IMG/VR virus record: IMGVR_UViG_3300035181_000471
Location: 124,001-188,000 of that record
Reading direction: 5' to 3' (one strand)
DNA: 64,000 bases
The notes below the pieces were generated by a model that was not told the origin of the DNA, made no database searches, and saw nothing but the letters and a program-made list of their open reading frames with translations. The translations under genes and the position numbers were made by a program. How positions within the stretch are numbered: the first letter of the stretch is position 1; each line of letters opens with the position of its first letter. Positions 38,044 to 56,455 of this stretch are shown piece after piece.

Positions 38044-39399
38044 ATGCAATCGAATATGATGAGAAAAAGGGCCTTACAAGAAGCCAAGAAGTGTCCTGAC
38101 TGTGAGAGTCAGGGTCATGCTTGTGCAAAACACAACACTGTTGTAAGAGCGTTGGACCTACCTCAGTCTAAGAGTGCCATGCCCTCTAAGGAATATGAAC
38201 AGGATAAGACCTACCAAGACAAGGGTTCCGAAACTGATTTACAAGTCAACATTCAAGGTGCCGTTAGTCCTGCTAAGGGAGTACTAGACTACATCAAGCA
38301 GAAGCGTGTTGCACTAGAACAAGTTCTACAAACCAGAGGTGAGGCAGCAGTAGTCACCATGGCTTCTAAAGATCTTGCTGAGACTGTCCCCGGTGTAGCC
38401 AACACCAACACCAGCCTGCTAGGTGGAGTAATCGCCAAATATCTAATCCAACTAACACAGAAGGCCAAAGGCCAGAAGGTGACCCCCGCTTTTAACGACA
38501 GCCAATTTCTACAAGAAATCGAACCAATCCTAGAAAGGAAACACGCCTCCATGAACACCGCTGGAAAGAACCTAAAAGACAAGTCTGAGGAAGAATTAGA
38601 AGAGATGGAATCTTCTGATAAGGCCAATAAGACCAAGATGAAGAGACAGCCAGAAGGTGACAAGAAGGCTTCCTCGAAGCTAGCCGCCGAAGGTGGAGCA
38701 GAGGACGAAGAAGAGACTGAAGAGCAAACTTCTGTTGATTCAGCCGTGGTTGCCCTACTCGATTCCTGTAAGAACGAGTGGACCAATCTAGGTGAGCCTG
38801 TCAATCCTTCCACTTGGCCCAAGGAAATTGAAAGAGCCATTCTCAACCTAAACGACTCTATAATCAAAGCCATTGAGTCAACCGAGAGTAAGCTCATCGA
38901 GGGTGAGTTCTACTCTAAGAATGTTGACGAAGGTGTAAGCTCTGCTGGTGGTGGGTCTGCCATGATGAACGATCTATCTGTAGCTCCCGCTGAAGAAGGT
39001 GTAAATGGCGTCACCAATGATGAAGTTGTAGAGGAAGCTCCTTTAGACAACGAGATCAAGGCCAAGAAGTCTTCCAAGACTGCCGCCGCTGATATCACCT
39101 CCACCGAAACCAAAAAGGCCCTCAAGTTCGTCGAAGATCTTCAGGAAAAAGTTGCCGCTCTGTTCTTCGACTATAAAAAGACCGTAGAAGCCACTAATAA
39201 TTCTGCTCTAGTCAAGTCTGCTGGAGAGGATCTAGTTCGCCTCAAGACCAAGCTCAGCGAAGTAGAGAAGGTAATGAGCAAGCAGTTAACCGTTCTATCC
39301 GAGGCCGAGGAGTCCACCGAGAAGCAGAACAAAGAAAACGCCAAGTCTTCAAAACAGTCATCCAAGTTTATGGGCCTATCTCTTGCCTCTGAAGAGTAA
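38044..39399 (+). CDS. acidic/coiled-coil probable head-internal protein with Zn ribbon and K-x-A motifs
   Basis: KKCPDC; KKASSKLAAE, SKTAAAD; Glu-rich. Confidence 0.6.
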   Translation: MQSNMMRKRALQEAKKCPDCESQGHACAKHNTVVRALDLPQSKSAMPSKEYEQDKTYQDKGSETDLQVNIQGAVSPAKGVLDYIKQKRVALEQVLQTRGEAAVVTMASKDLAETVPGVANTNTSLLGGVIAKYLIQLTQKAKGQKVTPAFNDSQFLQEIEPILERKHASMNTAGKNLKDKSEEELEEMESSDKANKTKMKRQPEGDKKASSKLAAEGGAEDEEETEEQTSVDSAVVALLDSCKNEWTNLGEPVNPSTWPKEIERAILNLNDSIIKAIESTESKLIEGEFYSKNVDEGVSSAGGGSAMMNDLSVAPAEEGVNGVTNDEVVEEAPLDNEIKAKKSSKTAAADITSTETKKALKFVEDLQEKVAALFFDYKKTVEATNNSALVKSAGEDLVRLKTKLSEVEKVMSKQLTVLSEAEESTEKQNKENAKSSKQSSKFMGLSLASEE

Positions 39400-39444
39400 T
39401 TAAAGGAAACTGCATTTTAATTTCTATGAAAGAGGAGTAAATAT

Positions 39445-40125
39445 ATGGCAGGCACATCTGACAGCTACCTTTACAGACAAGGCGCTTCCGCCCAAACGAA
39501 GTCTGTAATTTCTAGCCGCTTTAAAATTTTCAGTCATGTCGCTGGAGTGGGTAAGTTCGTGAAGATGGGTGTGACCACCTCCTTCAACATTTCCGAGTCC
39601 AAGAACATTGACACCATTCGTGGTCTAGGCTATGGCGATCAAATTGCCGAGCTAGTCCCTGGCGTAACCCAGCCTATGTCCTTGACGATCAATCGTCACG
39701 CTCTCTACCTAGCCAATATCATGCAGATGTTCGGTTATAAGGCCGGAGCATCTGGACTAGTCCGTTCCCTCAAGCACCACAAGTGGCCCTTCGACATCAA
39801 GACCGAGATCGTGTTTTCTGAGCTAGCTTCAGAAGCCAAGGATACCGGACAGGCTCAGACTGCCGATGTTCCCTCTGAGGGTGGCCTAAACAATCTAGGA
39901 AACCCCGGCCTATACGCCATTGTAACCGTATACGAAGGTTGCTGGATGTCCAACTACTCCACCGCTTATCAGGTTGAGCAGGCCGCTGTATCTGAAGATG
40001 TGACTGTAATGGTCTCCGATGTCTTCGATGCTAACGGTTCCGTCTACGGTGAATTCATTGATTCCGGTCTAAATAAGGGTGATGCCACTGGCCGCTCCTT
40101 GAGACTAGCCAACGAACCCAGATAA
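39445..40125 (+). CDS. tail tube protein
   Basis: TSFNISESKNIDTIRGLGYG...ELVPG...SLTINRHALY; YEGCWMSNYS; follows sheath; own terminator. Confidence 0.8.
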   Translation: MAGTSDSYLYRQGASAQTKSVISSRFKIFSHVAGVGKFVKMGVTTSFNISESKNIDTIRGLGYGDQIAELVPGVTQPMSLTINRHALYLANIMQMFGYKAGASGLVRSLKHHKWPFDIKTEIVFSELASEAKDTGQAQTADVPSEGGLNNLGNPGLYAIVTVYEGCWMSNYSTAYQVEQAAVSEDVTVMVSDVFDANGSVYGEFIDSGLNKGDATGRSLRLANEPR

Positions 40126-40141
40126 CCAACAAAAACCGATG

Positions 40142-40174
40142 AAAGGCCCCTCATAAAATAGAGGGGCCTTTTTC
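40142..40174 (+). terminator. intrinsic terminator after tube gene
   Basis: AAAGGCCCCTC-ataaaata-GAGGGGCCTTT-TT. Confidence 0.85.
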
Positions 40175-40185
40175 ATAATAAACTG

Positions 40186-40206
40186 ACTATTGCACTCTTT
40201 AAGTGA
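40186..40206 (+). promoter_or_regulatory. candidate late promoter motif
   Basis: ACTATT-gcact-CT-ttaagt-GA, directly after a terminator, 10 nt before ATG. Confidence 0.45.
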
Positions 40207-40216
40207 ACGGTAGTAT

Positions 40217-40990
40217 ATGTCAAAAACCAAAATAGCCGACATCAACGACATCATAGAAATCCCTGGGAACAAGCTGTTCGACAACGGTCTTTGTGTAGAT
40301 GCTGGTCTACCTCCGCTTACAGATAGTGCAGAAGGCACGGTAGTTGTAAGCTCCCTACTCAAGAAAAAGGGGGATTTAAATGAAGAACTCACGAAGAACC
40401 GCACTTACTACGACAAGACTTACCAGACTGCACCAGGGCGTGATGGCGGTAACCCATTTGCTTCAAAACGAAATGAAGAGGATCAGTTACAGACTCAAGC
40501 AGACCCGCAGACGCATGATCATAAACCTCTCCGTTCTTCTGAGGATAAGGCGTGGATGGGATCTATGGGCATAAAGCAATCGGAGTACCATAAAGATCCC
40601 GATGAGCTTCCCCCTAGGGAAGACCTTAGAAACTATAGTGCTGAGGGGATCAAGAAAGAAGTTCTAGAAGAAGATCGTGATTTAGAGAAAACCTCCTCCT
40701 TATTAATTGGATCATTCAATCATACCGTTGATACAAAAAGAGCCGCTGTAAAAGTTGCATCTGTAAAATCGTTAAGAGCATTCGTAACTCCTACTAATAT
40801 CAAGATTCACGACCAACATCTAGTTGTCAATCTTCCAAGAACTGCCTCTCGTGACATCGAGTTTGATTCCAAGAAGCTATCCGCTATCGAAAATGAAATC
40901 TCCAGGGCTTTAAATGTGAGAGCTAAATACGCTCATTTTATGGTGTCCTCGTCCTATGACGGTGTGGCGTTGGAGTTTCTCTTATGCTAA
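40217..40990 (+). CDS. hypothetical head-region protein
   Basis: 257-aa ORF; KVAS, RTAS motifs. Confidence 0.6.
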   Translation: MSKTKIADINDIIEIPGNKLFDNGLCVDAGLPPLTDSAEGTVVVSSLLKKKGDLNEELTKNRTYYDKTYQTAPGRDGGNPFASKRNEEDQLQTQADPQTHDHKPLRSSEDKAWMGSMGIKQSEYHKDPDELPPREDLRNYSAEGIKKEVLEEDRDLEKTSSLLIGSFNHTVDTKRAAVKVASVKSLRAFVTPTNIKIHDQHLVVNLPRTASRDIEFDSKKLSAIENEISRALNVRAKYAHFMVSSSYDGVALEFLLC

Positions 40991-41096
40991 ACCGAGCTAA
41001 ACTAAGTTCCAGGATCTACTCTGATGATTATAGGGCTAGAATGAAAGTAGCCCCAAAACTTAGAAGGGAAAGAGAAGCCCTCTTGAAAGTGTAACC

Positions 41097-41960
41097 ATGC
41101 CAATCAACAAAACCGCAACAGCCGTGTTAACTGACCCAATCTATTCTTTGAATGATTGGAACAAGCTTCATGGGCCAAAAGCCTTCGGCCAGAAGACCGC
41201 AGGCTTCAGCAAATTTGCTGGCAATACCTCCAAGTATCTTCTTTCGCATGTCACCATCATGTCTTCTGTCATGACTGAGAACGAGCCTGATGACTACCTC
41301 ATCAAGCCTGAGTGTTCTTATCTAGTCAACCAGAATGAAGATGGTTGGGAAAACGAAGTTCTCAAGATGTCCTACAGATCCTTCGTAGGAGCTTTTAACT
41401 TCCTTGAACACATGCAGAACAGAAAGCAATCCAAAGGTCACATTATCGACTCCGTTCTCAGAAAGATCAGCATCACTGGGGATGTCTGGGTCTATTTCGT
41501 AGATCTCTTGGTTGCAACTGACCTAGCTCACGAAAAGCTTGTGAGTCAGATCAGAAATGGCGAAGTAAAATATCTCTCGATGGGATGTGTCACCGATCTA
41601 GTTATCTGCTCATATTGTGGACACAGAGTTACTGAGGATGGAAATTACTGCAACCACCTATCATACAATAAGGGGCAGTTCATCCCTGACGACGATGGTG
41701 TGTCTAGAAGAGTGGCCGAGCTTTGTGGTCACAAATCCCTACCCAACGGTGGCGTAAAGTTCGTTGAAGCCTCATGGGTAGAGATTCCCGCTTTCCCTGG
41801 AGCCGCTGTAAGAGAAATCATTGCAGACTCTTGGGAGGGTCCAAAGACCGCTTACACCAAAGACGCAGAAGAGCTAGGAAGGCGTAAAGCCGCATCTTCA
41901 TTGATTCTACCCGGAGCCGATGCTACTGATGCCGCCTTTAATAGATTGCTTATGAGGTAA
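41097..41960 (+). CDS. prohead (capsid maturation) protease, HK97/assemblin-like, with Zn-finger insertion
   Basis: NFLEH, YLSMGC (catalytic Ser candidate), CSYCGH...CNH, EASWVEIPAFPGA; upstream of scaffold and MCP. Confidence 0.85.
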   Translation: MPINKTATAVLTDPIYSLNDWNKLHGPKAFGQKTAGFSKFAGNTSKYLLSHVTIMSSVMTENEPDDYLIKPECSYLVNQNEDGWENEVLKMSYRSFVGAFNFLEHMQNRKQSKGHIIDSVLRKISITGDVWVYFVDLLVATDLAHEKLVSQIRNGEVKYLSMGCVTDLVICSYCGHRVTEDGNYCNHLSYNKGQFIPDDDGVSRRVAELCGHKSLPNGGVKFVEASWVEIPAFPGAAVREIIADSWEGPKTAYTKDAEELGRRKAASSLILPGADATDAAFNRLLMR

Positions 41961-41985
41961 ACTATTAAAGCTATGCAATATTTAA

Positions 41986-42005
41986 ACTTTTAATGTCTTT
42001 AAAGA
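41986..42005 (+). promoter_or_regulatory. candidate late promoter motif (scaffold)
   Basis: ACTTTT-aatgt-CT-ttaaa-GA. Confidence 0.5.
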
Positions 42006-42040: not shown

Positions 42041-43333
42041 ATGACCGCAAAACCTTCACTAAGAGAAAGAATCGCTACCCTAAAGGCCGAGAAAGAAGCC
42101 AAGACCGCCGCTTCTGCTTCCAAATTCTCTGCTAAGGAAGCAAAAACTCGTGTAGCCGCTTCTTGGACAATCGCCAAGACCCTACTTCCCTCCGCTCCTA
42201 GCGAAGTGCAGTATAAGTTGGCTTCTTCCCTACTAGGGAACTCCACCAATGCTTTGACCGCCATCGTGCGTCAGGCCGCTGTAAATGCTCACTGGACCAA
42301 GGTCGCAGAGAAGTTCGAAGAGATGCACAAGGTCGAACTAAATGAGCTAATCGAAGACCCCTCTCTTCTCAGCAAGATGCAGAATGAAGTTGAGAAAGAG
42401 CTAAAGGGCGAAGCCAAGAATGCTTCTGCTAAGTGTGAGTGTGGTAAACCCGGTTGCCCCGAGTGCAACCCTAAGACTGCAAAGGCTAAAAAGGCCGAAG
42501 GTGAGAACAAGCCCATTGAGAACAAGCCCATTGAGGATAATGAAATCAAGGAACCCGAAACGGAAGTCCCCGCTCCTTCAGTTGAAGACTCCTCTATGGA
42601 AGACTCCTCTATGGAAGACTCCTCTAATGAAGCTGACGCCGATGCCTCTGATGCTCCCGTTTCTCCTGCCGAGAACAAAAAGGACATTCTAGTAGAGCAG
42701 ATTCAGACCATTAAGGATGATGTTGCCGCTCTAGAGGAAGAAGTAACTGAAGGCGAGGAACTTGACTTCTCTGCCATCTTCGATGAAGAGGGAATGGAAG
42801 ACAAGGCTGACAATCTAGCCAATGAGAATGAGGATTTTGATGGCGACATCGAAGCTTCTGGTGAAGGATTCTTCACTCCCTCTGATGCTGGTGATCTAGA
42901 AGGCGCAATGGACGCTGATGGCATGGACTTCGCTGACGCTTCTGACTTCTTCTCCCACTCCGCCTCCGTAGACTCTATGGATGGCTTATTCGCTGGTGAA
43001 GCCAAGACCGCCGCTAAGGATGATGTCATTGCTCCTGGTGAGATGGGTGACAAGATCGTAAGCAAGGGAAATGTGGATGATGCTGAGTCGGACCACGAGG
43101 ACAACATCCTATTCGAAATCCTAGGCGATATCAAGTCTGTTGCTTATGAAGATGGCGAGTATAAGAGAACCACTGAGCCTAAGTTTGAGAAGGCTGCTTC
43201 TGCCAAGCCTGCTCCTGCTGTGAAGCGCCCAATTCGTTCCCTAGGTAATGTGAAGACTGCCGCTCCTTCACAAAGCGTTGAGAAGACTGCACTGGCTTCT
43301 CTAGTCTTCCCCGATGACGAACTCTTCGGATAA
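42041..43333 (+). CDS. capsid scaffolding protein (putative)
   Basis: Highly acidic, helical, between protease and capsid genes; many KTAA/KxA motifs; small Zn module CECGKPGCPEC. Confidence 0.7.
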   Translation: MTAKPSLRERIATLKAEKEAKTAASASKFSAKEAKTRVAASWTIAKTLLPSAPSEVQYKLASSLLGNSTNALTAIVRQAAVNAHWTKVAEKFEEMHKVELNELIEDPSLLSKMQNEVEKELKGEAKNASAKCECGKPGCPECNPKTAKAKKAEGENKPIENKPIEDNEIKEPETEVPAPSVEDSSMEDSSMEDSSNEADADASDAPVSPAENKKDILVEQIQTIKDDVAALEEEVTEGEELDFSAIFDEEGMEDKADNLANENEDFDGDIEASGEGFFTPSDAGDLEGAMDADGMDFADASDFFSHSASVDSMDGLFAGEAKTAAKDDVIAPGEMGDKIVSKGNVDDAESDHEDNILFEILGDIKSVAYEDGEYKRTTEPKFEKAASAKPAPAVKRPIRSLGNVKTAAPSQSVEKTALASLVFPDDELFG

Positions 43334-44039: not shown

Positions 44040-44945
44040 ATGGCTACTCTATCCCGCACCCAAGCACAGACCGCTCAGCTAGGTCAGATCCTAAAGACCG
44101 CCGCTGGCCGTCAGAAACTTGCCGCCGCTCTCGGACCTTCGCTCCGTAGACGCCGCGACTATATGTCCATCGCTCGTAAGGCCCTCATGGTTGAAACACT
44201 ACCTGATGGCGCACTACCAATCTACGACAAGGAATTCGATGAAACTGGTCGTTCCTTCGTTGAAGCATTCGTAGTAGGTGAGCAGGGTGGCGACATCGTG
44301 AAGTTGGCTAACCCCCTTCGCGTAACCGTCCCCACCTTCGAAATCGCCTCCAACCCAATGATTCCTATCACTCAGATCAAGGAGCGTAGATTCGACATCG
44401 TTTCTCGCGCCCTAAATCTAGCAAAGGCTGAAATTGGCGCTGCTGAAGATGGTTTCGTGTTCAACCTCTTCGATACGATTGCTACTGCTGCCAACGGCAA
44501 GGCTACCAGCGATCCTATCTACAATGTGAACTACCCCCTATCTGGTAGCATCACTCCTGATGCTATGGCCGATCTATTCGGACAGGTCCAGAGACATGAC
44601 AACTCCGTTGCCTATGTATTCGTCAATCCCCGCGATTACACTGACTTCCTCAAGTGGCATGACTCCACCCTAGACCGTGAGACCCAGAGACACCTACTCA
44701 AGACTGGTATCATGGGCTACCTCTGGGGCGCAACCGTCCTACAGAGCAGAAAAGTGGGCTACGGCTCAGTTTATGTCCTAGCTGACGCTGAGTTCCTAGG
44801 CGTAATTCCTGAGAGAGTTCCTCTCACAGTGCTTTCTGCTGATCGCCCTGACCTCCGTCAGATCGGTTTCAGCGTCTTCGAAATCGCTGGATTCCTCGTC
44901 TTCAACCCCTCTGGCGTTCAGAAGATGATCGTAACTCGTCCCTAA
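44040..44945 (+). CDS. major capsid protein (HK97-fold, inferred)
   Basis: RRRRDYMSIARKALMVETLPDGALPIYDK; protease-scaffold-decoration-MCP synteny; strong SD; strong terminator. Confidence 0.85.
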   Translation: MATLSRTQAQTAQLGQILKTAAGRQKLAAALGPSLRRRRDYMSIARKALMVETLPDGALPIYDKEFDETGRSFVEAFVVGEQGGDIVKLANPLRVTVPTFEIASNPMIPITQIKERRFDIVSRALNLAKAEIGAAEDGFVFNLFDTIATAANGKATSDPIYNVNYPLSGSITPDAMADLFGQVQRHDNSVAYVFVNPRDYTDFLKWHDSTLDRETQRHLLKTGIMGYLWGATVLQSRKVGYGSVYVLADAEFLGVIPERVPLTVLSADRPDLRQIGFSVFEIAGFLVFNPSGVQKMIVTRP

Positions 44946-46463: not shown

Positions 46464-46886
46464 ATGCACGAATTACTTGTCAAGAAAGCCGCCCCTTTAA
46501 GCGATGATGCCAAAGACCGCCTTGGTCAGCATGGTGATGTCGTAGTTGAGGAGAGGGCTATCGGTGATTACGAATTCTTCCTGGTTCAGAACCGTTATAT
46601 GCGTTATGTCCAGTTAGGTATGCAAAGAGTGGGTCAGGACATGACCAATATTGAGGAGCAGACAACCAAAATCCCTCAAGAAAAAGGAAAATTTTCTATG
46701 AGTGAACTGAAAAGTTTGCTCAATGAGTGGGTATTTGAATATGAGAAGATCCTGATTGGGACTTACGAACCTAGAAAACGAGCATTCTACGCTAAGATTA
46801 TCAGGGCGCTAGGATTCAAATTAGGCGAGATGATGGTGGCCGGACATTCAGTCCTGGTCCTCAACGAACCCGCCGATAGCGAGTAA
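46464..46886 (+). CDS. hypothetical protein
   Basis: 140-aa ORF. Confidence 0.55.
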   Translation: MHELLVKKAAPLSDDAKDRLGQHGDVVVEERAIGDYEFFLVQNRYMRYVQLGMQRVGQDMTNIEEQTTKIPQEKGKFSMSELKSLLNEWVFEYEKILIGTYEPRKRAFYAKIIRALGFKLGEMMVAGHSVLVLNEPADSE

Positions 46887-46903
46887 GTCCTTCCATAAAA
46901 CAG

Positions 46904-46924
46904 ACTTTCAGAATCTTAAGATGT
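46904..46924 (+). promoter_or_regulatory. candidate late promoter motif
   Basis: ACTTTC-agaat-CT-taagat-GT. Confidence 0.5.
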
Positions 46925-46944
46925 AGGATTAACAAGGAGTCTAT

Positions 46945-47142
46945 ATGGCTAAAATTGCCGCTACAGATAACACCGCTATGAACAAGCTCTTCGCCCTTGA
47001 AGCCACCAAAGCTGGCAGTAAGGTCGCCGCTGGAGATGTTCAGGCATTCGAAGATCACAAGGACTATGTATCCACCCTAGAGTCCATCCTCAGCGATGAC
47101 AAGAAGACCTCTTGGTCCCCCAACGATCTTCTACTAGACTAA
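46945..47142 (+). CDS. small hypothetical protein (KIAA, KVAA motifs)
   Basis: 65-aa ORF with AAGGAG SD. Confidence 0.6.
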   Translation: MAKIAATDNTAMNKLFALEATKAGSKVAAGDVQAFEDHKDYVSTLESILSDDKKTSWSPNDLLLD

Positions 47143-47157
47143 AGATACGAGGTTCAA

Positions 47158-49470
47158 ATGACTCGTAATCTTCTAGATGCCCTGATTACGGCAACATCCG
47201 AGGTCTCCGTGAAAACTGGTTATTTACAGCCAGGGGATATGGCCGTTGCCGCTAACGGTAAGGCTTTCGTGGTTACCGCTTCTCGTTCTATGGGTAAAAA
47301 GAACACCTACAAAGTCGCCTTTGAAGACGGCACTGAGGTTCCCCTAGAAGGCGATGGAGTGATGACTTTTGAAGACATGGGCGCAGAGAATTCTCCCATG
47401 GAAAAACTTTCAACGCTGCATAAACTGGCGTTGAATCCTGACTTTGATCTTTATGTAAAAACCTCCATCTCGGACCACAACCTCCCAATTGATGAAGATG
47501 TCAATTGGGCTAAGTGGCTTGAAGCTACCTACAGAATGATGGTGGCTCCAACTAACGATGAAGTGAGAGATGAAGCCATTCACCATATGCTTATCGAAAA
47601 TCTATTCAGGTACGATGCCCTGGCTAGGTTCGATGCTTCAAGACTCCCTGCCTCTATTCAAGCCCTGCCAGTTGAGAAGCAAGTGTCTTCTTACCTGAAG
47701 GGTTATTTCCTTAAGCAGAGATCTGACTGCGTTGAGTGGGTCAAAAAGACTTACGCAACGGGTAAAGAAATGCTCGTCATGGACGATGCTGACGGTAGCG
47801 AAGCCTTCATTAACAGCCCTGAATACTCCGAGGCCGATTCTGGTTTTGAGGGCTCCATCTCTAAGATGGACACAGAGAAATTCAGAAAGTCCTTCCTGCA
47901 CTTCCTAGAGAATGGTGCTGGGCTAACCCACAAGAAAACAAAAGAGAAGGTTGCACTTCTTCTCAACTTGATCCTAGACACTCCTGCTACCAAGCCTGGA
48001 GAGATTATTCAACGACTCGCTGATCAAGCTGAGGTGTCGCACTCCACAGCTACCAAGCTATTCTTCACTACGCTTCCTCCTCTAATTGAAAAGTTTATGA
48101 AGACTCCTGAGGGTGCTTCATTGAACAGTGAGAAACAACCCTCTGTAGCTAAGCATTCTAATTTGGAGGACTCCTCGATGCGTAAATCCCGTTTTGCAAA
48201 AAGTAAGCAAGCTGAAGCTGATAAATGCCCTCAGTGCGGCCAGAATCTAGTAAATGGAATCTGCCCTACCTGTAAGGACAAGGCTGACAAGGCCGCTAAG
48301 GAACAGTCCAAGGCTCTAAATACCCAGCAACAGCCTGAAAAGACTGGTCCCCAGGTCAAGTCTTACGGCTCCGTAACCGCTGGTAACAAGGCAGCTAGAA
48401 CTGAAGGAACCCCTTCTGCATGGTCCGTAGATAACAATAGAGTTCTACCCTCCAAGGACGGTGAACCCGAAGGTCCAAAGATCAAGATCAAGGCTTCTAC
48501 TGATAAGTATGCCACCTTCCGTCACCTAGCTGAAGAGGAGGCTCCCGCAATTTCTGAGGCTCTAGTAGAACTTTCTCAGGCTTTCGCTACTCTAGCTGAA
48601 GCTTCTGAAGCTCTAGTAGAGAATCTAGACCTAGCCCCTATTCCCGAAGAGGGCTCTATTAAGGATAAGGTCGCTTCTCGCAAGAAGTTCGCATCCACCC
48701 TTAAGAAGCTAGCCGAAGAAGCACCTGATAAGGTTGAAGAGGCCGTCAAGGAACTTTACAGTTCTCTAGATGAGATCGCTTCGGCTATGGAAAATCTAGC
48801 TTCTAACCTAGGTATTGATCTAGTCAGTGAAGAATCTGAGTTGGATGAAGAAGTCCATGATGAGCTAGCTGATACCCATGACACTGAAGAAGTTGTTGAA
48901 GAAGTTGACAACTCTGAAGTGCCTGAGGATGTTCAGATTGATGGTGCCGATGCTCCTGCTATCCTGGATGAGTTTGTCGGTGAGAACAAAAAGAGCAAAG
49001 AAGCAATTAAGAAGCTTCACACTGAAAAAGGGAAAGAAATTGAGTACGGTCCTGGTGGAAAGGTAAAATGCCCTTACTGCAATACCTGGAAGAAGGCTCA
49101 GGAACCTTGCCCTAACTGTGGTAATAAAGAAGCCTCTCTACGCGAGAGAATCATGGCCCGTAGAGCCGCCAGAACTAAGACCGCCGCTCAAGTAGTCTGC
49201 AATACCGAGTCTGGTGGCGTGTGGACCAAGTATGAAGCTGGGGATGATGAAGCCATTATGAAGGCTTGTGAGGGTACCAAGTGGTCCCTTTGTGACCCAA
49301 GAATGGCCGCTGAGTATCTAGCTAAAGGTCCTCTATTCATCTTGTCTGAAGGCCCCGAATCCTTCGCTGTGTATGATCCCACCAGAGACATCATTTACGA
49401 TGTGGATGATGCCGAGACTGACTTCTTTGATGAGGAACTAGCAGAACTAAAAACCTGCCTAGGCCAGTAA
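47158..49470 (+). CDS. multidomain probable head protein containing an ECF-sigma-like domain, Zn ribbons and K-x-A motifs
   Basis: DEAIHHML...ARFDASR...VSSYLKGYFLKQRSD (region-2-like); GEIIQRLADQAEVSHSTATKL (region-4 HTH-like); CPQC/CPTC and CPYC/CPNC. Confidence 0.6.
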   Translation: MTRNLLDALITATSEVSVKTGYLQPGDMAVAANGKAFVVTASRSMGKKNTYKVAFEDGTEVPLEGDGVMTFEDMGAENSPMEKLSTLHKLALNPDFDLYVKTSISDHNLPIDEDVNWAKWLEATYRMMVAPTNDEVRDEAIHHMLIENLFRYDALARFDASRLPASIQALPVEKQVSSYLKGYFLKQRSDCVEWVKKTYATGKEMLVMDDADGSEAFINSPEYSEADSGFEGSISKMDTEKFRKSFLHFLENGAGLTHKKTKEKVALLLNLILDTPATKPGEIIQRLADQAEVSHSTATKLFFTTLPPLIEKFMKTPEGASLNSEKQPSVAKHSNLEDSSMRKSRFAKSKQAEADKCPQCGQNLVNGICPTCKDKADKAAKEQSKALNTQQQPEKTGPQVKSYGSVTAGNKAARTEGTPSAWSVDNNRVLPSKDGEPEGPKIKIKASTDKYATFRHLAEEEAPAISEALVELSQAFATLAEASEALVENLDLAPIPEEGSIKDKVASRKKFASTLKKLAEEAPDKVEEAVKELYSSLDEIASAMENLASNLGIDLVSEESELDEEVHDELADTHDTEEVVEEVDNSEVPEDVQIDGADAPAILDEFVGENKKSKEAIKKLHTEKGKEIEYGPGGKVKCPYCNTWKKAQEPCPNCGNKEASLRERIMARRAARTKTAAQVVCNTESGGVWTKYEAGDDEAIMKACEGTKWSLCDPRMAAEYLAKGPLFILSEGPESFAVYDPTRDIIYDVDDAETDFFDEELAELKTCLGQ

Positions 49471-50986: not shown

Positions 50987-51265
50987 ATGCGTTCCAAAAA
51001 TAATCAAATCCATTACCTAGGAAGAGTTAAGTCTACCATTCCTCCTGCGGAAAAAGGTGCTAAACAAGCCGCTTCTATGGGCCTTGTAAGGATCGCTGGG
51101 AATGTTTTTGAATGTCCTAGCTCTAAGGATTTATGGAAGGTTGAGGGTTCCAAGGTCATTCGACTATCCTCATCTGAGGTAGATAATGACGAATCCCTCA
51201 AGCCTGCGAATAAGGCGAATCCTTCCAAGTTCTTGAAAGACATTCTAGCTGAACTAGAGCTATAA
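50987..51265 (+). CDS. small hypothetical protein
   Basis: 92-aa ORF with GGAG SD. Confidence 0.6.
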   Translation: MRSKNNQIHYLGRVKSTIPPAEKGAKQAASMGLVRIAGNVFECPSSKDLWKVEGSKVIRLSSSEVDNDESLKPANKANPSKFLKDILAELEL

Positions 51266-51275
51266 GAGAGACAAA

Positions 51276-52583
51276 ATGACCAAACCAAAATACGCCGTTA
51301 CCTCCCTGTTAGACCAGTTTCTTGAAGAGACTGAGCCTGACTATAACGCTTTGGGACTAAAAGGCCCCAAGGCTATCGGTGACCAATTCAGGGAACTCTC
51401 AGCCGATGAAGCTGATTTCGGTTTCCTAGATGGCATTGCTGGACACTCCAGACACCAGACCGCCCTTGGTCACACCTCCAGTTACACGCCTCGTCAGCTA
51501 AATAGAAGCACTGATGAGACCAATGACTCCGTGCTTGGTGAGGCTACCCAGTCCTTCCAAAAGGCCGAGAACACTGATTACGAGAAAAAGGGGCTTAACG
51601 AAAGTGAAATTCACAATCGTCTGAAGCTCCTTTTGAATTTAGGGTTCACTCCTGAGAAGATCGCTGGCTTCATTAAGTCTGCTGATCTAAAGGTATTTGA
51701 CACCTCTCAGTCCCTTGGCACCTTCATTCAGGATTACGCTCCCGGCCTAGGTCTAGCCTACATCGAACCCAATTTTTACATGCAGTCTTGTGATCAGTCT
51801 TTCGCCAAGATTCAGAAAGAAGGCAAGCTAAGAGCAATGGCCGTTAAGAAGGTTTCTGCTTGTGAAGGTTGCGCCAAGCTCAAGAATGGTAATTGCAATT
51901 TATACCGCAAGCCTGTAGTAGCCAATGCCTCCGAGTTAACTACCGTAGTAAAGGCAGAGCTAGAGAAGAAGAATATCAAGTCAGCCTCCCTCAAGGAAGG
52001 TCTAGCCAAGCTAGCATCCAATGAGAAGGTTGCTCAGCCCTCCATCACCGCTATGCAAAATACTGGCACCGTAAGAACTGCTGGTGACAAGACTGCAATG
52101 ATCAAGAAGGAAGCTTCTGTTGCTGAGATCGGAGCCGCTATTACCGCTGGCATTCCTGTTCAGAAGGTATTCAAGCAAGCCGCCGCTCAGTATGGTAAGA
52201 TCTCCGCTATGGCCGCTGTAAAGCGTTATATCGCCTCCCTAAAGGGTTCCAAGGCCAAGGTTGTTATCGCCGCTCTAGACTGCTCTTACCTTAAGGGTAA
52301 GCTAGCATCCACCAATGCAATCATTGGTGAGTCCAAGTGTGCCTCTTGCTCTTACAGAGGCGGGATGCACTGTGGCTTGACTGGTGGAACTCTTCTATCC
52401 TTCCCTGGAATGAACAGAGTCGCAACCAACAAGATTTCCCACAGCACTGAGACCGATGGTCGTTCCGTTCTATTCGAATACGAGATGCTTGATACCAACG
52501 AAGATGTTCCTCTAACGATTGACGAAGATAGAACTGATACCGATGTCGAGTTGACAACCACTTCTAAGATTGATGTAGAATAA
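51276..52583 (+). CDS. probable head protein with duplicated 4-Cys module and K-x-A motifs
   Basis: C..ACEGCAKLKNGNCNLY and C..KCASCSYRGGMHCGLT; KSAS, KLAS, KEAS, RTAG. Confidence 0.6.
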   Translation: MTKPKYAVTSLLDQFLEETEPDYNALGLKGPKAIGDQFRELSADEADFGFLDGIAGHSRHQTALGHTSSYTPRQLNRSTDETNDSVLGEATQSFQKAENTDYEKKGLNESEIHNRLKLLLNLGFTPEKIAGFIKSADLKVFDTSQSLGTFIQDYAPGLGLAYIEPNFYMQSCDQSFAKIQKEGKLRAMAVKKVSACEGCAKLKNGNCNLYRKPVVANASELTTVVKAELEKKNIKSASLKEGLAKLASNEKVAQPSITAMQNTGTVRTAGDKTAMIKKEASVAEIGAAITAGIPVQKVFKQAAAQYGKISAMAAVKRYIASLKGSKAKVVIAALDCSYLKGKLASTNAIIGESKCASCSYRGGMHCGLTGGTLLSFPGMNRVATNKISHSTETDGRSVLFEYEMLDTNEDVPLTIDEDRTDTDVELTTTSKIDVE

Positions 52584-53074: not shown

Positions 53075-53080
53075 GGGGTA

Positions 53081-56000
53081 ATGATGAGTAATGTTCAAAA
53101 GTCTTTCACTACAATGGGTCTACAGGCCGTTCTTGGTGCTGTAACCAATGCAGTCATTGAGGCCGAAAAGAAGGCCAAGAGTTCCAGGGAGATTCAGTCC
53201 CTAGACATCCTTCGTCCAGGACTTCGCCAGGATCTATACATTGGCAAGCTAATGGTCGTTCCTTACAATGTCATGGAAGATGTCAGCAAGGTTCCCCTAC
53301 CTCTACTCAAAGGCGCTACCCTAAGTCTATTTGATGGTGAGGAAGCCTCCTGCCTAGAAGCTCATAGACTAGCTGAGACCGAATTCGATGAGCTAGAGCC
53401 TAAGGACTTCGTAACCTACAAGGATAAGGTCTTCCGTGATGAAGATGGTAAACTGGGGTGCCTCTGTGTGTTCCTACCCGCTTGGTCTAATCCTCGTGAT
53501 TACGCTGGCTTCCGCTTTGTCAAGGACGCCACTAAGCTAGAGCAGTTGATTCGTCACTTAGTATTCTCCGCTTATTTCAAGCCTTCTCTCTCCGCAATGT
53601 TCGACATTCTAGAAGAGGACCAGCTAAAGCTTGACGCCGTAAACATCCAGCACGAACACATGGGGCCAATGTCTGAACTAATGGCTAAATCCAACACCTA
53701 CCCTGTGCTTGAGAGCGGTGCTACAAAGACCGCTGGGGTGGCTAGGAAGCCTCTATTGAGGTTTGCTGCATCCGAGATCAACTCCATTAAAGAGGAGTTC
53801 CTAAGCCCCGAAGAGAAGGCTGTAATGGATCAACTATCTGAAGCTGTGGTATCCAAAGCTTCTTCTTTATCTGATGGGCCTACGGGTCACACCTATAATC
53901 ACAGCAATGGCATAGTCCCTCAAAGAGGCGGCTATAATGACAGACCAGCGTCAGAGCCAGTAACCAACGCCTGCCGTAAATGCAATGAAAGCCTAGACGG
54001 AAATAAGAGTGATTACTATTGCGATAAGTGTAACATGCCTCTCAAGAAGTATGCTGAAGGTGAGGAGCCAGTAGAGGCTTCCATGATGCGTATTGGTGAC
54101 GAGGATGGCGCTGTTGTATCCGGCCCTAACACAGATGAAGATCTAATCATTGCCATCGCCAAGGATGCAGAAGACCTAGTATCCGAGAAATATCTAGCTT
54201 TGGGAGACTCTCTGGACCTAGTTGAGAATGTCGATTCCGGCGCTTACGATCTGGCTCTTGAAGAGGCTATTTACGAAATCATGGAAAAGAAGTCCATTCC
54301 TTACCATGATGCCGAGGAAGTTGCCGCTAAGGTCAAGGAGTACTTGACTGAAGAATGGGACGGAGAGACCACTGAAGGATGGGACGAAGAGAAGGTAGAC
54401 GGACTAGACCCCGAGCTAGAAGCGGAACTAAACAGTGTCTACGGTGATCCCGACATTGACATTGATGCTGAAGAATCCAAGACCTCTTCCAAGAAAGTTG
54501 CATTCATTGACTTTTTCGGTAAGTGTGAGAAGTGCGGCGCTCTAGTTGGTGTCCCCCCAGGTTCCGCTCCCGAGGGTCATGCGATCCTCTGCCCCAAGTG
54601 CCAGGGTGGGGATAACGACCCCAAGAAGACTTCTTCCAAGAAGAAGGCCGGTAATCCTACCGCTGGGTCCGTGGGTAACCACAAAGCTGAGCCTAAGAAG
54701 GCTACTCCTACTTCTTGGTCTGTAGATAACACTAGACCTGAACCCTCTACTCTTCCTCAGGAAACCACTGAAGAGCAGATCGAAGCCAAGGAAAAGACTA
54801 CCCCCAGTATTAATACTTCCGTATCTGCAAGCCTAAAGTTCGCTAAGGCCACTGAATACTTTGATGTGGTAAGAGAAGAACTACAAGAGCCCGAAGAAGC
54901 TGCCGTTACTGATGACTCCGGCCTAGATGTCCCAACTGAAGTCCAGACTGCCGCCGATGTTCTCTCTGAGGATTTCGCTGGTCAGAGGGGCCTAGGCTCC
55001 AAGCCTGACTATGATTCTGAAAAGTCGGTTGGTGCCATTGAGCCAGAGGACGCAGAGAAAGAGCCTAAGAAGACTCCAGAAGATGTGGAGAGAGAACTAA
55101 ATTCTCCCGCTGAAGAGAAGCCAGAGCCTAAGAAGACTCCAGAAGATGTGGAGAAGGAACTGGACGAGCCTAAGCCTGAGGAAAAGGCCAAGGAAGAGAA
55201 AGAAGAGCCCACCCCTAAGCAGGGCGGATTAAAAAAAAAATTAAATAAAGAGGCTATCACCTACCAGCATCCTGGTGACGGACTTCACGCTCTAGACATG
55301 GATCAGGAGGATGTTCTTCTCCGTCCAGAGTCTCTCAGCGCCCCCAAAATTAGCAAAAAGAAGCTAGCCTTTGACTGGGCCACTCCTGGACAAGTTCTAA
55401 GAGAATTCCAGCCTGGATTATACAATCAGCTTCAGGATCAAATGCACGACAGGGATGACTACTTCCCCGTAGAAGAGTCCATGAATAAACCAACCTCTCA
55501 TCCAGGAGAGCCTAGCCGTGATGAGAGCAATGCAGAAGAAAAGCACACGCTAACTTCTCCCGGCCTAGTATCTACTGAATCCGGTGGCGGAACCCCTCTT
55601 CGCTCTCAGGAGAGAAACATCCGTGGACCCTTCTTCATGGATCAGTTCTACAAGATTCACGCTGATATTGCTCCTGCGAACTTGACCGTGAAGTCCTCCT
55701 CCCTGAAGACGGCATCCAACGAAGAGAAACAGAGCTTAGTCTCTGACTACCTCCTCAAGCTTTCTGCTGAGATCGGGTCTTCCCTACTAGCCGCTTGCAT
55801 GGTAACTGACAAGCCTTCATTCGTTGGAGTCCCAACTGAAGGAACTATCGACCTAAGCAATGGTTGGACGGAAATGAACTCCATGTTTGCAACTGCAAAT
55901 CCTATGGTTGCACAGCTTAAGTCACTATTTGAATCCATCTCCGATAGTGAACTTTCTGATGCTATTAATGACGCTTGGTCTCAAGCCGCAGTATGGAAAA

Positions 56001-56110
56001 GCTCTGGAATCCAGGCATTCTTATACGAAGTCTTCGTCAGAATCGAATCTGTTGATACCGAAACCATGCTAGTCAAATACAAGTTCATAACCAGCCTAAA
56101 AGAAAAGTAA
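53081..56110 (+). CDS. large acidic probable head-internal protein (Zn ribbons, K-x-A motifs)
   Basis: CRKC/CDKC and CEKC/CPKC; KTAG, KVAF, KKAG, KEAI, KLAF, KTAS; 30-bp internal duplication (EPKKTPEDVE x2). Confidence 0.65.
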   Translation: MMSNVQKSFTTMGLQAVLGAVTNAVIEAEKKAKSSREIQSLDILRPGLRQDLYIGKLMVVPYNVMEDVSKVPLPLLKGATLSLFDGEEASCLEAHRLAETEFDELEPKDFVTYKDKVFRDEDGKLGCLCVFLPAWSNPRDYAGFRFVKDATKLEQLIRHLVFSAYFKPSLSAMFDILEEDQLKLDAVNIQHEHMGPMSELMAKSNTYPVLESGATKTAGVARKPLLRFAASEINSIKEEFLSPEEKAVMDQLSEAVVSKASSLSDGPTGHTYNHSNGIVPQRGGYNDRPASEPVTNACRKCNESLDGNKSDYYCDKCNMPLKKYAEGEEPVEASMMRIGDEDGAVVSGPNTDEDLIIAIAKDAEDLVSEKYLALGDSLDLVENVDSGAYDLALEEAIYEIMEKKSIPYHDAEEVAAKVKEYLTEEWDGETTEGWDEEKVDGLDPELEAELNSVYGDPDIDIDAEESKTSSKKVAFIDFFGKCEKCGALVGVPPGSAPEGHAILCPKCQGGDNDPKKTSSKKKAGNPTAGSVGNHKAEPKKATPTSWSVDNTRPEPSTLPQETTEEQIEAKEKTTPSINTSVSASLKFAKATEYFDVVREELQEPEEAAVTDDSGLDVPTEVQTAADVLSEDFAGQRGLGSKPDYDSEKSVGAIEPEDAEKEPKKTPEDVERELNSPAEEKPEPKKTPEDVEKELDEPKPEEKAKEEKEEPTPKQGGLKKKLNKEAITYQHPGDGLHALDMDQEDVLLRPESLSAPKISKKKLAFDWATPGQVLREFQPGLYNQLQDQMHDRDDYFPVEESMNKPTSHPGEPSRDESNAEEKHTLTSPGLVSTESGGGTPLRSQERNIRGPFFMDQFYKIHADIAPANLTVKSSSLKTASNEEKQSLVSDYLLKLSAEIGSSLLAACMVTDKPSFVGVPTEGTIDLSNGWTEMNSMFATANPMVAQLKSLFESISDSELSDAINDAWSQAAVWKSSGIQAFLYEVFVRIESVDTETMLVKYKFITSLKEK

Positions 56111-56119
56111 GGGGACAAC

Positions 56120-56455
56120 ATGGAAAAGAAAGCCACCATTCCAATGCTGGGCAATCTAAAGTTTGCTAGCGATGTAGCTGAGTATCTATACACTCTTGAA
56201 TTTGATAGATCCATTGGGTTGCCGGAGGATATCGGCTGGCACGGACTCTATGTTGGTGACTTAGCTGATGGTGCTGGGTTTGACCAGTTAACAACTGCTG
56301 ATCAAGAGGCCCTAAAAACTGCATCAGCCGCCATCCTAATGGAAGACGAACATCACTTTGTAGACGCTGAATTTTTCGATGACGAGCAGGAAGCCAAAAG
56401 AACCTGGGAAGACATCGAAGATAGTTATTACGACTTTTATGATAAGAGATCATAA
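56120..56455 (+). CDS. hypothetical acidic protein
   Basis: 111-aa ORF; KFAS, KTAS. Confidence 0.55.
   Translation: MEKKATIPMLGNLKFASDVAEYLYTLEFDRSIGLPEDIGWHGLYVGDLADGAGFDQLTTADQEALKTASAAILMEDEHHFVDAEFFDDEQEAKRTWEDIEDSYYDFYDKRS

What the first reader, a model, noticed from the sequence alone, without database searches (positions are those of the whole stretch)
38044..56455. K-x-A-[S/A/G] recurs across head proteins: candidate prohead-protease cleavage code
Seen: KTAA/KTAS/KKAS/KVAS/KLAA/KEAS/KFAS/KTAG-type motifs, often clustered, in the scaffold (KTAA three times), MCP N-terminus (LKTAAG, QKLAAA), the protease (KTAG, KFAG, RKAAS) and ORFs 30587, 38044, 40217, 46464, 46945, 47158, 51276, 53081 and 56120, frequently at apparent domain borders. 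They also occur, more sparsely, in the sheath. Established: jumbo-phage proteases process many head proteins at short motifs (T4 gp21 and phiKZ gp175 cut after Glu), and herpesvirus assemblins, which share the HK97-protease fold, cut A/S bonds (e.g. YVKA/S). Inference: cleavage after Ala at K-x-A.
Basis: partly seen in the sequence, partly recalled or inferred. Interest (0 to 1): 0.7.

Follow-up and report, generated by a model that had tools for sequence, protein, structure and literature searches.

The report
Lys-x-Ala-Ser/Ala head-protein cleavage motif
The short motif Lys-x-Ala-(Ser/Ala) is strongly and specifically over-represented in the head-assembly proteins of this 221-kb jumbo phage and its relatives, and it flanks the catalytic domain of their capsid protease, so it is very probably that protease's previously undescribed cutting signal.

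Summary
The 19 ORFs of window 38044-56455 contain 39 K-x-A-[S/A/G] motifs, against about 11-13 expected from whole-protein or 20-residue local shuffles (z about 8). The other 193 ORFs of the genome contain 64 against 63-65 expected.

- **Unbiased scan:** K-x-A is the top over-represented residue pair in the head ORFs after C-x-x-C.
- **Which variants count:** only K-x-A-S and K-x-A-A carry the signal. K-x-A-G and permuted control motifs do not.
- **Relatives:** the excess recurs in six related phage head modules.
- **Conservation:** motif Lys and Ala are more conserved than their flanks or than other Lys and Ala.
- **Protease:** ORF 41097-41960 has the herpesvirus-assemblin / T4 gp21 fold. Its three motifs lie in flexible tails on either side of the catalytic domain.
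- **Protease family:** in 105 homologues about 35-74% identical to it, the post-domain site is a conserved island [K/R]-x-A-S. The motif is 3-4-fold enriched in the tails and not in the fold.

Best reading: this is a prohead-protease cleavage code, probably cut after Ala by analogy with assemblin A|S sites. It is a new specificity of a known kind of system. No proteomic data exist, so the scissile bond and MCP processing remain inferred.

The parts
41097..41960 (+). Prohead (head maturation) protease, 287 aa. The catalytic domain is about residues 44-243. His105 and Ser161 are invariant. A Cys-rich Zn-ribbon-like insert is present (C164, C171, C174, C185, H187).
   Evidence: phrog_18299 'head maturation protease' at 3.4e-18. 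AF2 model with mean pLDDT 84 and the domain above 90. VIA-align Z scores: 10.8 to VZV protease, 10.2 to T4 gp21, 8.4 to HCMV protease. Invariant columns in 105 homologues.
41193..41222 (+). Two N-terminal motif sites of the protease, KTAG33 and KFAG39, just before the catalytic domain. These are predicted N-terminal self-processing sites.
   Evidence: K33 and A35 are invariant in 6 clade members. The region has pLDDT about 60 and precedes the folded domain. N-terminal extensions of 107 homologues hold K.A[SA] 29 times against 9.7 expected.
41886..41897 (+). KAAS264, about 20 residues after the catalytic domain. This is the predicted C-terminal self-cleavage site.
   Evidence: Column counts in 105 homologues: K 76 / R 20; A 62 / V 16; A 97; S 57. 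The flanks are variable. 73 of 140 anchored homologues have K.A[SA] at a median of 37 residues after the WVxxPAxxGA anchor. Phage G gp19 has KVAS248 and KIAS274.
42041..43333 (+). Scaffold-like acidic protein, 430 aa, with six sites: KTAA21 (42101-42112), KLAS59 (42215-42226), KNAS126 (42416-42427), KTAA322 (43004-43015), KAAS384 (43190-43201) and KTAA405 (43253-43264).
   Evidence: 6 sites against 1.6 expected. K405 and A407 are invariant, and [K/R]-[T/Q]-A-[A/S/G] is kept at site 322 in five orthologues although the flanks diverge. The scaffold role is inferred from gene position between protease and MCP and from composition; no family hit was found.
44040..44945 (+). Major capsid protein, 301 aa, with KTAA19 (44094-44105) and KLAA26 (44115-44126) in the N-terminal arm. 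Processing here is possible but unresolved.
   Evidence: phrog_2522 at 1.7e-43. Phage G gp27 (PDB 6WKK) at 5e-54. KTAAGRxKLAA is kept in the 51%-identical LR745208 MCP although residues 1-17 diverge. KTAA19 is lost in some close homologues, and both sites are absent from phage G gp27.
38044..39399 (+). 451-aa protein immediately after the tail-tube-sized ORF (37594-38031, directly downstream of the sheath gene). Tunturi 5 gp328, the gene at the same position, is annotated 'DNA ejection protein'. It is a predicted internal-head or ejection protein. Sites: KHAS166, KKAS207, KLAA212, KTAA345, KVAA369, KSAG391.
   Evidence: 6 sites against 1.3 expected. Counterparts at the same position in relatives carry 5-12 sites. 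K-x-A-A at 212 and K-x-A-[A/S/T] at 345 lie directly N-terminal to the two conserved domains.
40217..40990 (+). 257-aa head-module protein with KRAA174 and KVAS179.
   Evidence: 2 sites against 0.33 expected. KVAS179 is kept as KVAA in one of two orthologues.
46464..47142 (+). Two small ORFs with N-proximal sites: 46464-46886 (KKAA7) and 46945-47142 (KIAA3, KVAA26).
   Evidence: Counts. K3, A5, K26 and A28 are invariant in three orthologues of the 65-aa protein.
47158..49470 (+). 770-aa protein, coiled-coil by composition with Zn-ribbon-like motifs. Sites: KVAS504, KFAS510, KEAS657, KTAA674.
   Evidence: 4 sites against 1.8 expected. Sites 504 and 510 are kept as KIAS and RFAS in an orthologue.
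50987..52583 (+). ORF 50987-51265 (KQAA26) and the 435-aa ORF 51276-52583, which has seven sites and the highest excess in the genome.
   Evidence: 7 sites against 1.15 expected, Poisson p 2e-4, top of 212 ORFs. KEAS278, KLAS342 and KCAS354 are kept in an orthologue. KCAS354 lies in an invariant Cys motif and may be structural rather than a cleavage site.
53081..56455 (+). 1009-aa ORF 53081-56110 (KTAG216, KKAG521, KTAS876) and 111-aa ORF 56120-56455 (KFAS14, KTAS66).
   Evidence: Counts. K876, T877 and A878 are conserved (KTAA in L003) directly before the conserved C-terminal domain. Sites 216 and 521, both with Gly at P1', are not conserved.
30587..31126 (+). 179-aa ORF outside the given range, with KRAG72, KRAS114 and KKAS126. 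It is a possible further substrate.
   Evidence: 3 sites against 0.45 expected, p 0.011. No orthologue lies in the fetched loci and there is no family hit.

Best explanation
K-x-A-[S/A], with Thr favoured at x and Arg sometimes replacing Lys, is the substrate recognition motif of the phage's own prohead serine protease (ORF 41097-41960). That enzyme has the herpesvirus-assemblin / T4 gp21 fold.

Proposed mechanism:
- During prohead maturation the enzyme trims its own N- and C-terminal tails at residues 33/39 and 264.
- It chops the scaffold-like protein into pieces small enough to leave the shell.
- It removes propeptides or separates domains of a set of internal-head or ejection proteins encoded at 38044-56455.
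- It possibly trims the first ~21-28 residues of the MCP.

Basis of each step:
- Shown by computation: head-specific enrichment, positional conservation, family-wide conservation next to the catalytic domain, and the protease fold.
- Inferred: that the motif is cut at all.
- Inferred by analogy: that the scissile bond is Ala|Ser/Ala. This places Lys at P3, Ala at P1 and Ser/Ala at P1'. The analogy is to the P3/P1 logic of T4 (L/I-x-E|), phiKZ/SPN3US (A-x-E|) and assemblins (V/L-x-A|S).
For: 1. Enrichment: 39 motifs against 11-13 expected in head ORFs, with none elsewhere in the genome (64 vs 63-65). Nine of the ten most motif-rich ORFs of the genome lie in window 30587-56455.
2. De novo discovery: K-x-A is the top non-Cys pair in head ORFs, p 2.7e-8 over 1600 patterns. 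Thr at x and Ser after Ala are also enriched.
3. Specificity: permuted motifs are null and only Ser/Ala after Ala count.
4. Replication: z 3.2-6.8 in Tunturi 5 and four metagenomic relatives, and 22 vs 7.7 in the 485-kb phage LR745208.
5. Conservation: motif Lys/Ala identity is 0.58 against 0.36/0.39 for other Lys/Ala, and 0.58 against 0.41 for the flanks (p 0.002), with control motifs null. Sites sit just before conserved domains.
6. Link to the enzyme: in 150 representatives of the protease family (clusters at 50% identity) the motif count is 239 against 77. A [K/R]-x-A-S island is conserved after the domain. By zone: N-terminal tail 29 vs 9.7, catalytic domain 8 vs 12.7, C-terminal tail 129 vs 33. 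An unbiased scan of 111 C-terminal extensions again yields K-x-A (p 3e-24), R-x-A and A-S.
7. Fold: VZV protease Z 10.8, T4 gp21 Z 10.2, HCMV protease Z 8.4. The motif sites lie in low-confidence tails outside the domain.
8. N-terminal bias: 7 of 19 head ORFs against 6 of 193 others have a site in the first 43 residues (Fisher 1.8e-5). This matches the N-terminal propeptides of SPN3US substrates; self-cleavage of its protease is also documented (PMC10052503).
Against: - No mass-spectrometric or N-terminal sequence data for this phage or any close relative were found in the papers I could read. The phage G capsid-structure paper, which may hold such data, is not held in the library.
- The portal homologue (genome 36113-38410) has no K-x-A-[S/A] site.
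- Phage G's MCP and its scaffold-position protein gp21 lack the motif, although its protease and portal carry it.
- Several individual sites are not conserved. At least one, KCAS354 in ORF 51276, lies inside an invariant Cys motif and is more likely structural.
- Which ORFs of 38044-56455 are truly head-internal is inferred from gene position only.
- The complex prediction of protease with a scaffold peptide gave no answer.
Confidence: 0.7

Rival explanations
1. The motif is the protease's recognition signal, but the cut is not after Ala. It could be after the Lys (a trypsin-like K|x-A-S cut, or a Lys at P1), or one residue further on.
For: Lys/Arg interchange at the first position (K 76 / R 20 of 105; R-x-A also enriched) is what a basic-residue P1 pocket would give. 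Nothing computed here fixes the bond.
Against: Ala two residues on is the most invariant position (97 of 105), and Ser follows it in 57 of 105. The closest structural relatives put specificity at P3 and P1. From general knowledge assemblins cut V/L-x-A|S; SPN3US cuts A-x-E| (PMC10052503). The i/i+2 spacing of Lys and Ala fits P3/P1.
Confidence: 0.15
2. K-x-A-[S/A] is a short linear binding or targeting motif, for example for docking to MCP, scaffold or portal, or a Lys modification site. It is not cleaved.
For: The conserved island in the protease tail could be a capsid-targeting element. From general knowledge, HK97-type proteases use their C-terminal tail for encapsidation. No cleavage has been shown.
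Against: The motif is repeated up to 6-12 times per protein in unrelated head proteins, often in pairs 5-7 residues apart and at domain borders. That is the pattern of T4 and phiKZ cleavage sites, not of a targeting tag. It flanks the catalytic domain on both sides and is not enriched inside it (0.6 of expectation).
Confidence: 0.08
3. The sites are cut, but by another peptidase. Candidates are a host enzyme or a second phage enzyme, such as the weakly crotonase/ClpP-like ORF 56465-57061.
For: ORF 56465-57061 has a weak PHROG hit (3.4e-7) to an enoyl-CoA-hydratase-like family. From general knowledge that fold is shared with ClpP/S49 peptidases. Phage G encodes ClpP/ClpX, which were found in its virions (PMC12484599).
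Against: There is no Pfam support for ORF 56465. The motif co-varies with the assemblin-fold protease: it flanks that domain in more than 100 diverse homologues, including protease-scaffold fusions.
Confidence: 0.04
4. The excess is a compositional or structural by-product of Lys/Ala-rich helical or low-complexity head proteins. On this reading it has no function.
For: Head-internal and scaffold proteins are Lys/Ala/Glu-rich, and K-x-A without Ser/Ala is mildly high (51 vs 38.7, z 2.2).
Against: Local 20-residue shuffles still give z 7.6. Reversed and register-shifted motifs are null. Motif residues are more conserved than their flanks while control motifs are not. The same motif emerges de novo in an independent, diverse protein set.
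Confidence: 0.03

Closest known systems
T4 gp21 prohead protease and its L/I-x-E| sites
   Same: Same fold (Z 10.2). The gene sits with the scaffold and MCP genes. A short P3-x-P1 type motif is scattered through scaffold, internal proteins and the MCP N-terminus. Predicted self-trimming occurs at both ends.
   Different: P1 would be Ala rather than Glu, and P3 Lys rather than Leu/Ile. [LI].E is only weakly elevated here (z 2.7). Sequence similarity is too low for Pfam or PDB sequence searches. A Zn-ribbon-like insert is present.
phiKZ gp175 / SPN3US gp245 prohead proteases (S/A/G-x-E| or A-x-E|)
   Same: A jumbo-phage setting in which many head and ejection proteins are processed at a three-residue code. 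Multiple sites occur per propeptide, substrates carry N-terminal propeptides, and the protease self-cleaves (PMC10052503).
   Different: [SAG]-x-E is not enriched in this head module (z -0.7). The code here is K-x-A-[S/A].
Herpesvirus assemblins (VZV, HCMV, KSHV proteases) cutting (V/L)-x-A|S at the M and R sites
   Same: The best structural match is VZV protease at Z 10.8, with HCMV at 8.4 and KSHV at 6.8. Small Ala followed by Ser are the conserved or enriched residues. A site follows the catalytic domain, like the assemblin R (release) site, and another lies near the scaffold C-terminus, like the M (maturational) site.
   Different: The position equivalent to P3 is Lys/Arg rather than hydrophobic; [LIV]-x-A-[SAG] is not enriched (z 0.1). 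The host is bacterial. The protease and scaffold are separate genes in this genome, though fused in many homologues.
Bacillus phage G gp19 and Tunturiibacter phage Tunturi 5 gp331 (uncharacterised homologous proteases of cultured phages)
   Same: Homologous protease, MCP and module order. Tunturi 5 shows the same enrichment and aligned sites. G gp19 has KTAA43, KVAS248 and KIAS274, and G's portal has KQAA18, KMAS55 and KIAS625.
   Different: No cleavage specificity was found reported for either in the accessible literature; the phage G capsid-structure paper could not be read. Phage G's MCP and gp21 lack the motif.

Membership tests
Assemblin / T4 gp21-fold prohead serine proteases (MEROPS clan SH) | Characteristic beta-barrel fold shared by herpesvirus proteases and T4 gp21 | tested here: met
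   The AF2 model has pLDDT above 90 over residues 44-243. VIA-align top hits are VZV protease at Z 10.8, T4 gp21 at 10.2 and HCMV at 8.4, clearly above unrelated hits at Z about 6. Foldseek's top hit is T4 gp21 at probability 0.80.
Assemblin / T4 gp21-fold prohead serine proteases (MEROPS clan SH) | Conserved catalytic His followed in sequence by catalytic Ser | tested here: inconclusive
   H105 and S161 (in the S-M-G motif) are invariant in 105 homologues, and H51 and H145 are nearly invariant. Their residue-by-residue superposition on the gp21 or assemblin catalytic residues could not be inspected with these tools.
Assemblin / T4 gp21-fold prohead serine proteases (MEROPS clan SH) | Encoded in the head-assembly module next to the scaffold and MCP genes | tested here: met
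   The gene order is protease 41097, scaffold-like 42041, a 164-aa ORF at the position of phage G's decoration gene gp26 (43530), then MCP 44040. The same order is seen in relatives.
Assemblin / T4 gp21-fold prohead serine proteases (MEROPS clan SH) | Proteolytic activity and self-processing | not testable with these tools
   There is only indirect evidence: conserved motif sites on both sides of the catalytic domain.
HK97 gp4-type prohead protease (Pfam Peptidase_S78/U35) | Significant match to the Pfam family model | tested here: not met
   The protease has no Pfam family at E up to 0.01.
Glu-specific head-protein cleavage codes (T4 L/I-x-E; phiKZ/SPN3US S/A/G-x-E) | Enrichment of the x-x-E motif in head proteins | tested here: not met
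   [SAG].E gives 110 vs 116 (z -0.7). [LI].E gives 88 vs 68 (z 2.7), which is not significant after multiple testing.
Assemblin-type A|S cleavage sites ((V/L/I)-x-A|S) | Ala at P1 and Ser at P1' | tested here: inconclusive
   Ala is nearly invariant (97/105) and is followed by Ser in 57/105 at the protease tail site. K-x-A-S is the most enriched variant (18 vs 4.3). That the bond cut is Ala|Ser is not testable here.
Assemblin-type A|S cleavage sites ((V/L/I)-x-A|S) | Hydrophobic residue at P3 | tested here: not met
   The position is Lys/Arg in 96 of 105 homologues. [LIV].A[SAG] is not enriched (26 vs 25.4).

The most novel reading that the evidence does not exclude
A very large, mostly uncultivated clade of jumbo and mega-phage prohead proteases uses a Lys-x-Ala|Ser/Ala code. 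The clade comprises about 1,400 clusters at 50% identity and includes phage G and Tunturi 5; its members have the assemblin fold with a Zn-ribbon insert. That code is a herpesvirus-like P1-Ala/P1'-Ser specificity, which to my knowledge has not been reported for a phage capsid protease. If true, A|S cleavage is either ancestral to the assemblin/prohead-protease lineage or arose twice. The motif could also be used to read the processed, head-internal (ejected) proteome of uncultured huge phages directly from sequence.
Probability: 0.45. Interest if true: 0.75.

Novelty: new variant of a known kind. Interest (0 to 1): 0.6.

Why it matters
Prohead-protease codes are the key that let T4, phiKZ and SPN3US researchers define which proteins are packaged, trimmed and ejected. 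Only Glu-type codes are well established for large phages.

A K-x-A-[S/A] code for the phage G / Tunturi 5-like clade would have three uses:
- It would give a sequence-only predictor of scaffold, propeptide and internal-head proteins in hundreds of uncultivated huge phages, whose head modules are almost entirely 'hypothetical'.
- It would tie phage and herpesvirus capsid proteases together at the level of substrate specificity as well as fold.
- It would be testable right away, because two relatives are in culture and virion MS data already exist for phage G.

Tried and rejected
- **MCP structure:** AF2 on 36 homologues (72-85% identical to the query) gave mean pLDDT 55, with the N-terminal half below 50. 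It cannot show where the N-arm starts, so MCP processing stays open.
- **Complex prediction:** protease residues 40-250 with scaffold peptide 392-420 returned 'no answer' at score 0.01. This is not evidence either way.
- **Family searches:** Pfam and PHROG searches of most head-module ORFs found nothing. A PDB sequence search with the protease found nothing meaningful.
- **Near-identical phages:** a megablast search found none.
- **Literature:**
  - Searches for proteomics or cleavage data on phage G, Tunturi 5, Bxz1-like phages or other jumbo phages with this motif found none.
  - The phage G capsid paper (J Mol Biol 2020) is not held.
- **691-aa ORF:** the motif-rich ORF at genome 206958-209033 was tested as a possible portal and is not one. 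The portal homologue is at genome 36113-38410 and is motif-free.
- **Erwinia Alexandravirus:** its protease homologue is short, has no tails and no motif, so it is uninformative.
- **Mycobacteriophage Catera:** gp93 and gp94 show about 2.5-3-fold [K/R]-x-A-[S/A] excess, but the Catera MCP has no clear site. This is suggestive only.
- **Rejected ideas:**
  - Paralogy among head ORFs as the cause of the excess.
  - Lys/Ala composition as the cause.
  - Sheath sites as substrates.

Full report
**Context.** The window is bases 124001-188000 of a single 221,217-bp contig. It is a jumbo myophage.
- Nearest cultured relative: Tunturiibacter phage Tunturi 5, 309 kb, MCP 69% identical.
- More distant relatives: an uncultured 485-kb phage (LR745208, 51%) and Bacillus phage G (37%).
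- Homologous MCPs are abundant in metagenomes, with 1,443 hits.

**Gene content of the stated range.**
- ORF 41097-41960 is a head maturation protease (phrog_18299, 3.4e-18).
- ORF 44040-44945 is the MCP (phrog_2522, 1.7e-43; PDB 6WKK phage G gp27, 5e-54).
- Between them lie an acidic 430-aa scaffold-like ORF (42041-43333) and a 164-aa ORF at the position of phage G's decoration gene.
- Upstream are a long sheath (33648-37538) and a tube-sized ORF.
- Most other ORFs of 38044-56455 match no family.

**Check of the observation.** I called 212 ORFs over the whole genome and counted K-x-A-[S/A/G].
- The 19 ORFs within 38044-56455 hold 39 motifs. Whole-protein shuffles give 11.3 +/- 3.1 and shuffles within 20-residue blocks give 12.9 +/- 3.3. 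None of 300 shuffles reached 39.
- The other 193 ORFs hold 64, against 62.5-63.4 expected.

- In the head ORFs K-x-A ranks second only to C-x-x-C (90 vs 47.5, p 2.7e-8), and adjacent K-T and A-S are also high.
- In the rest of the genome K-x-A is not among the top patterns.
- Around head K-x-A instances, Thr at x and Ser after Ala are enriched.

Control motifs with the same composition are all null: reversed, KA.[SAG], K..A[SAG] and A.K[SAG].
- K-x-A-S gives 18 vs 4.3 and K-x-A-A gives 15 vs 6.0; these two carry the signal.
- K-x-A-G (6 vs 2.8) and K-x-A-T do not.
- R-x-A-[SAG] is mildly high in both compartments.

Further points:
- The head ORFs are not paralogues.
- The sheath is not enriched (1 vs 1.17).
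- Nine of the ten most motif-rich ORFs in the genome lie between window 30587 and 56455.
- Seven of 19 head ORFs have a site in the first 43 residues, against 6 of 193 others (Fisher 1.8e-5).

**Replication and positional conservation.** The same excess appears in the head modules of all relatives examined:
- Tunturi 5 (24 vs 8.7) and four metagenomic relatives (14-35 vs 6-11; z 3.2-6.8), with permuted controls null apart from K..A[SA] in L005 (27 vs 9.5).
- LR745208 (22 vs 7.7).

Orthologue alignments show sites held in place while their surroundings drift.
- Protease: K33 and A35 are invariant, and K-x-A-S is kept at residue 264.
- Scaffold-like protein: K405 and A407 are invariant about 25 residues from the C-terminus. 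[K/R]-[T/Q]-A-[A/S/G] is kept at residue 322 inside a poorly conserved stretch.
- ORF 38044 family: K-x-A-A and K-x-A-[A/S/T] lie directly N-terminal to the two conserved domains.
- ORF 53081: K-T-A-[S/A] lies directly before the conserved C-terminal domain. The two Gly-type sites are not conserved.

Quantitatively:
- Motif Lys and Ala are 58-59% identical across orthologues, against 36-39% for other Lys and Ala in the same proteins (p 7.5e-4 and 2.7e-3).
- The motif core is 0.18 more conserved than its +/-12-residue flanks (p 0.002). K-x-A-[other], A-x-K-[SA] and K-x-x-A-[SA] show no such difference.

Not every site is conserved. KCAS354 of ORF 51276 sits in an invariant Cys motif and is probably structural.

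**Link to the protease.** An exhaustive HMMER search found 1,381 representatives (clusters at 50% identity) of the protease family. Many are protease-scaffold fusions of 450-600 aa, and some are long enough to carry inteins.
- In the best 150, K-x-A-[S/A] occurs 239 times against 77 expected.
- In an alignment of 105 members about 35-74% identical to the query, the only conserved element after the catalytic domain is an island at query residues 264-267. The counts are K 76 / R 20; A 62 / V 16 / T 7; A 97; S 57. The flanks are variable.
- 73 of 140 anchored homologues have an exact K-x-A-[S/A] at a median of 37 residues after the WVxxPAxxGA anchor.
- By zone in 107 homologues: N-terminal extensions 29 vs 9.7, catalytic domain 8 vs 12.7, C-terminal extensions 129 vs 33.
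- An unbiased pair scan of 111 C-terminal extensions again returns K-x-A (353 vs 195, p 3e-24), R-x-A, A-S and K-x-x-S. The excess persists beyond the first site (69 vs 22).
- Phage G gp19 carries KTAA43, KVAS248 and KIAS274, and its portal gp14 carries KQAA18, KMAS55 and KIAS625.

**Fold.** The AF2 model of the protease has mean pLDDT 84 and a well-defined domain at residues 44-243. The tails carrying sites 33, 39 and 264 have low confidence.
- An all-against-representatives structural search puts VZV protease (Z 10.8), T4 gp21 (Z 10.2) and HCMV protease (Z 8.4) clearly on top. Foldseek's top hit is T4 gp21.
- H105 and S161 are invariant.
- A Cys/His cluster (C164, C171, C174, C185, H187) forms a family-specific insert.

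**Interpretation.** The pattern has several features that are the signature of prohead-protease cleavage sites as known from T4, phiKZ and SPN3US (PMC10052503; general knowledge for T4):
- A three-to-four-residue motif, head-specific and repeated within scaffold and internal proteins.
- Sites placed near N-termini and at domain borders.
- Sites conserved within variable linkers.
- Sites on both sides of the protease domain, with no enrichment inside it.

I therefore consider K-x-A-[S/A] the recognition code of this protease (confidence about 0.7).

Placing the cut after Ala is inference. The two determinant positions are spaced i and i+2, like P3 and P1 in the Glu-type codes. Ala followed by Ser matches the A|S bond of assemblins, the best structural relatives. 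A cut after the basic residue cannot be excluded.

**MCP.** KTAA19 and KLAA26 lie in a conserved N-terminal arm.
- For trimming: LR745208 keeps KTAAGRxKLAA although residues 1-17 have diverged.
- Against: some close homologues lose the first site. Phage G has ETEE and VALA at these positions. Only 7-14 residues of N-arm would remain before the RRRRDY segment.
- The structure model was too poor to help.

I put MCP trimming at roughly even odds.

**Novelty.** The accessible literature contains no cleavage motif or N-terminal data for phage G, Tunturi 5 or related phages; the phage G capsid-structure paper could not be read. To my knowledge, the well-defined cleavage codes of large phages are Glu-type. 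This is a new specificity within a known kind of system. It is shared by a very large clade of huge phages, and it is directly testable in two cultured relatives.

Noticed in passing
window 38044-56455, e.g. protease 41097-41960 residues 164-187 and scaffold-like ORF 42041-43333 residues about 131-142: C-x-x-C is the single most over-represented residue pair in the head-module ORFs (13 vs 0.7). Zn-ribbon-like Cys pairs occur in the protease, where they are invariant in 105 homologues, and in the scaffold-like protein and ORFs 38044, 47158, 51276 and 53081. Metal-binding knuckles in scaffold and internal head proteins are unusual.
   Followed up: partly
window 49586-50200; also L002 6460-7125, L003 4135-4749 and 8377-9012(-), L004 8363-9040(-), L005 5191-5730: A GIY-YIG homing endonuclease gene sits inside the head module. 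Relatives carry GIY-YIG or Endonuclease VII genes at different places in the same module. L004 has an intein in the orthologue of ORF 45706. Many protease homologues of 900-1000 aa look intein-bearing. The head module appears to be a hotspot for selfish elements.
   Followed up: no
window 56465-57061: A 198-aa ORF at the end of the module has a weak PHROG hit (3.4e-7) to an enoyl-CoA-hydratase/carnitine-racemase-like family and no Pfam hit. From general knowledge that crotonase fold is shared with ClpP/S49 peptidases. It could be a second peptidase-like protein or a metabolic gene.
   Followed up: partly
genome 36113-38410 (minus strand; outside the window): The portal homologue (phage G gp14, E 7e-35) is encoded about 125 kb away from the protease-scaffold-MCP module, on the opposite strand. 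Unlike phage G's portal, it has no K-x-A-[S/A] site.
   Followed up: partly
genome 206958-209033 (L006 5659-7734; outside the window): A 691-aa ORF of unknown function has 4 K-x-A-[SAG] motifs against 0.54 expected. It is the only strongly motif-rich ORF outside the window's head region, so it may be a head-internal protein encoded elsewhere. It is not a portal homologue.
   Followed up: partly
window 33648-37538: The tail sheath is unusually long at 1,296 aa. Only its C-terminal ~330 residues match sheath families. Tunturi 5 has a 1,204-aa orthologue.
   Followed up: no
L007 (Mycobacterium phage Catera 39292-47450): In cluster C mycobacteriophages the homologous protease domain is part of a 1,369-aa protein (gp94) next to a 1,337-aa gp93. 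Both show about 2.5-3-fold excess of [K/R]-x-A-[S/A], mostly as R-x-A-A. This suggests the code may extend to that clade with Arg in place of Lys.
   Followed up: partly
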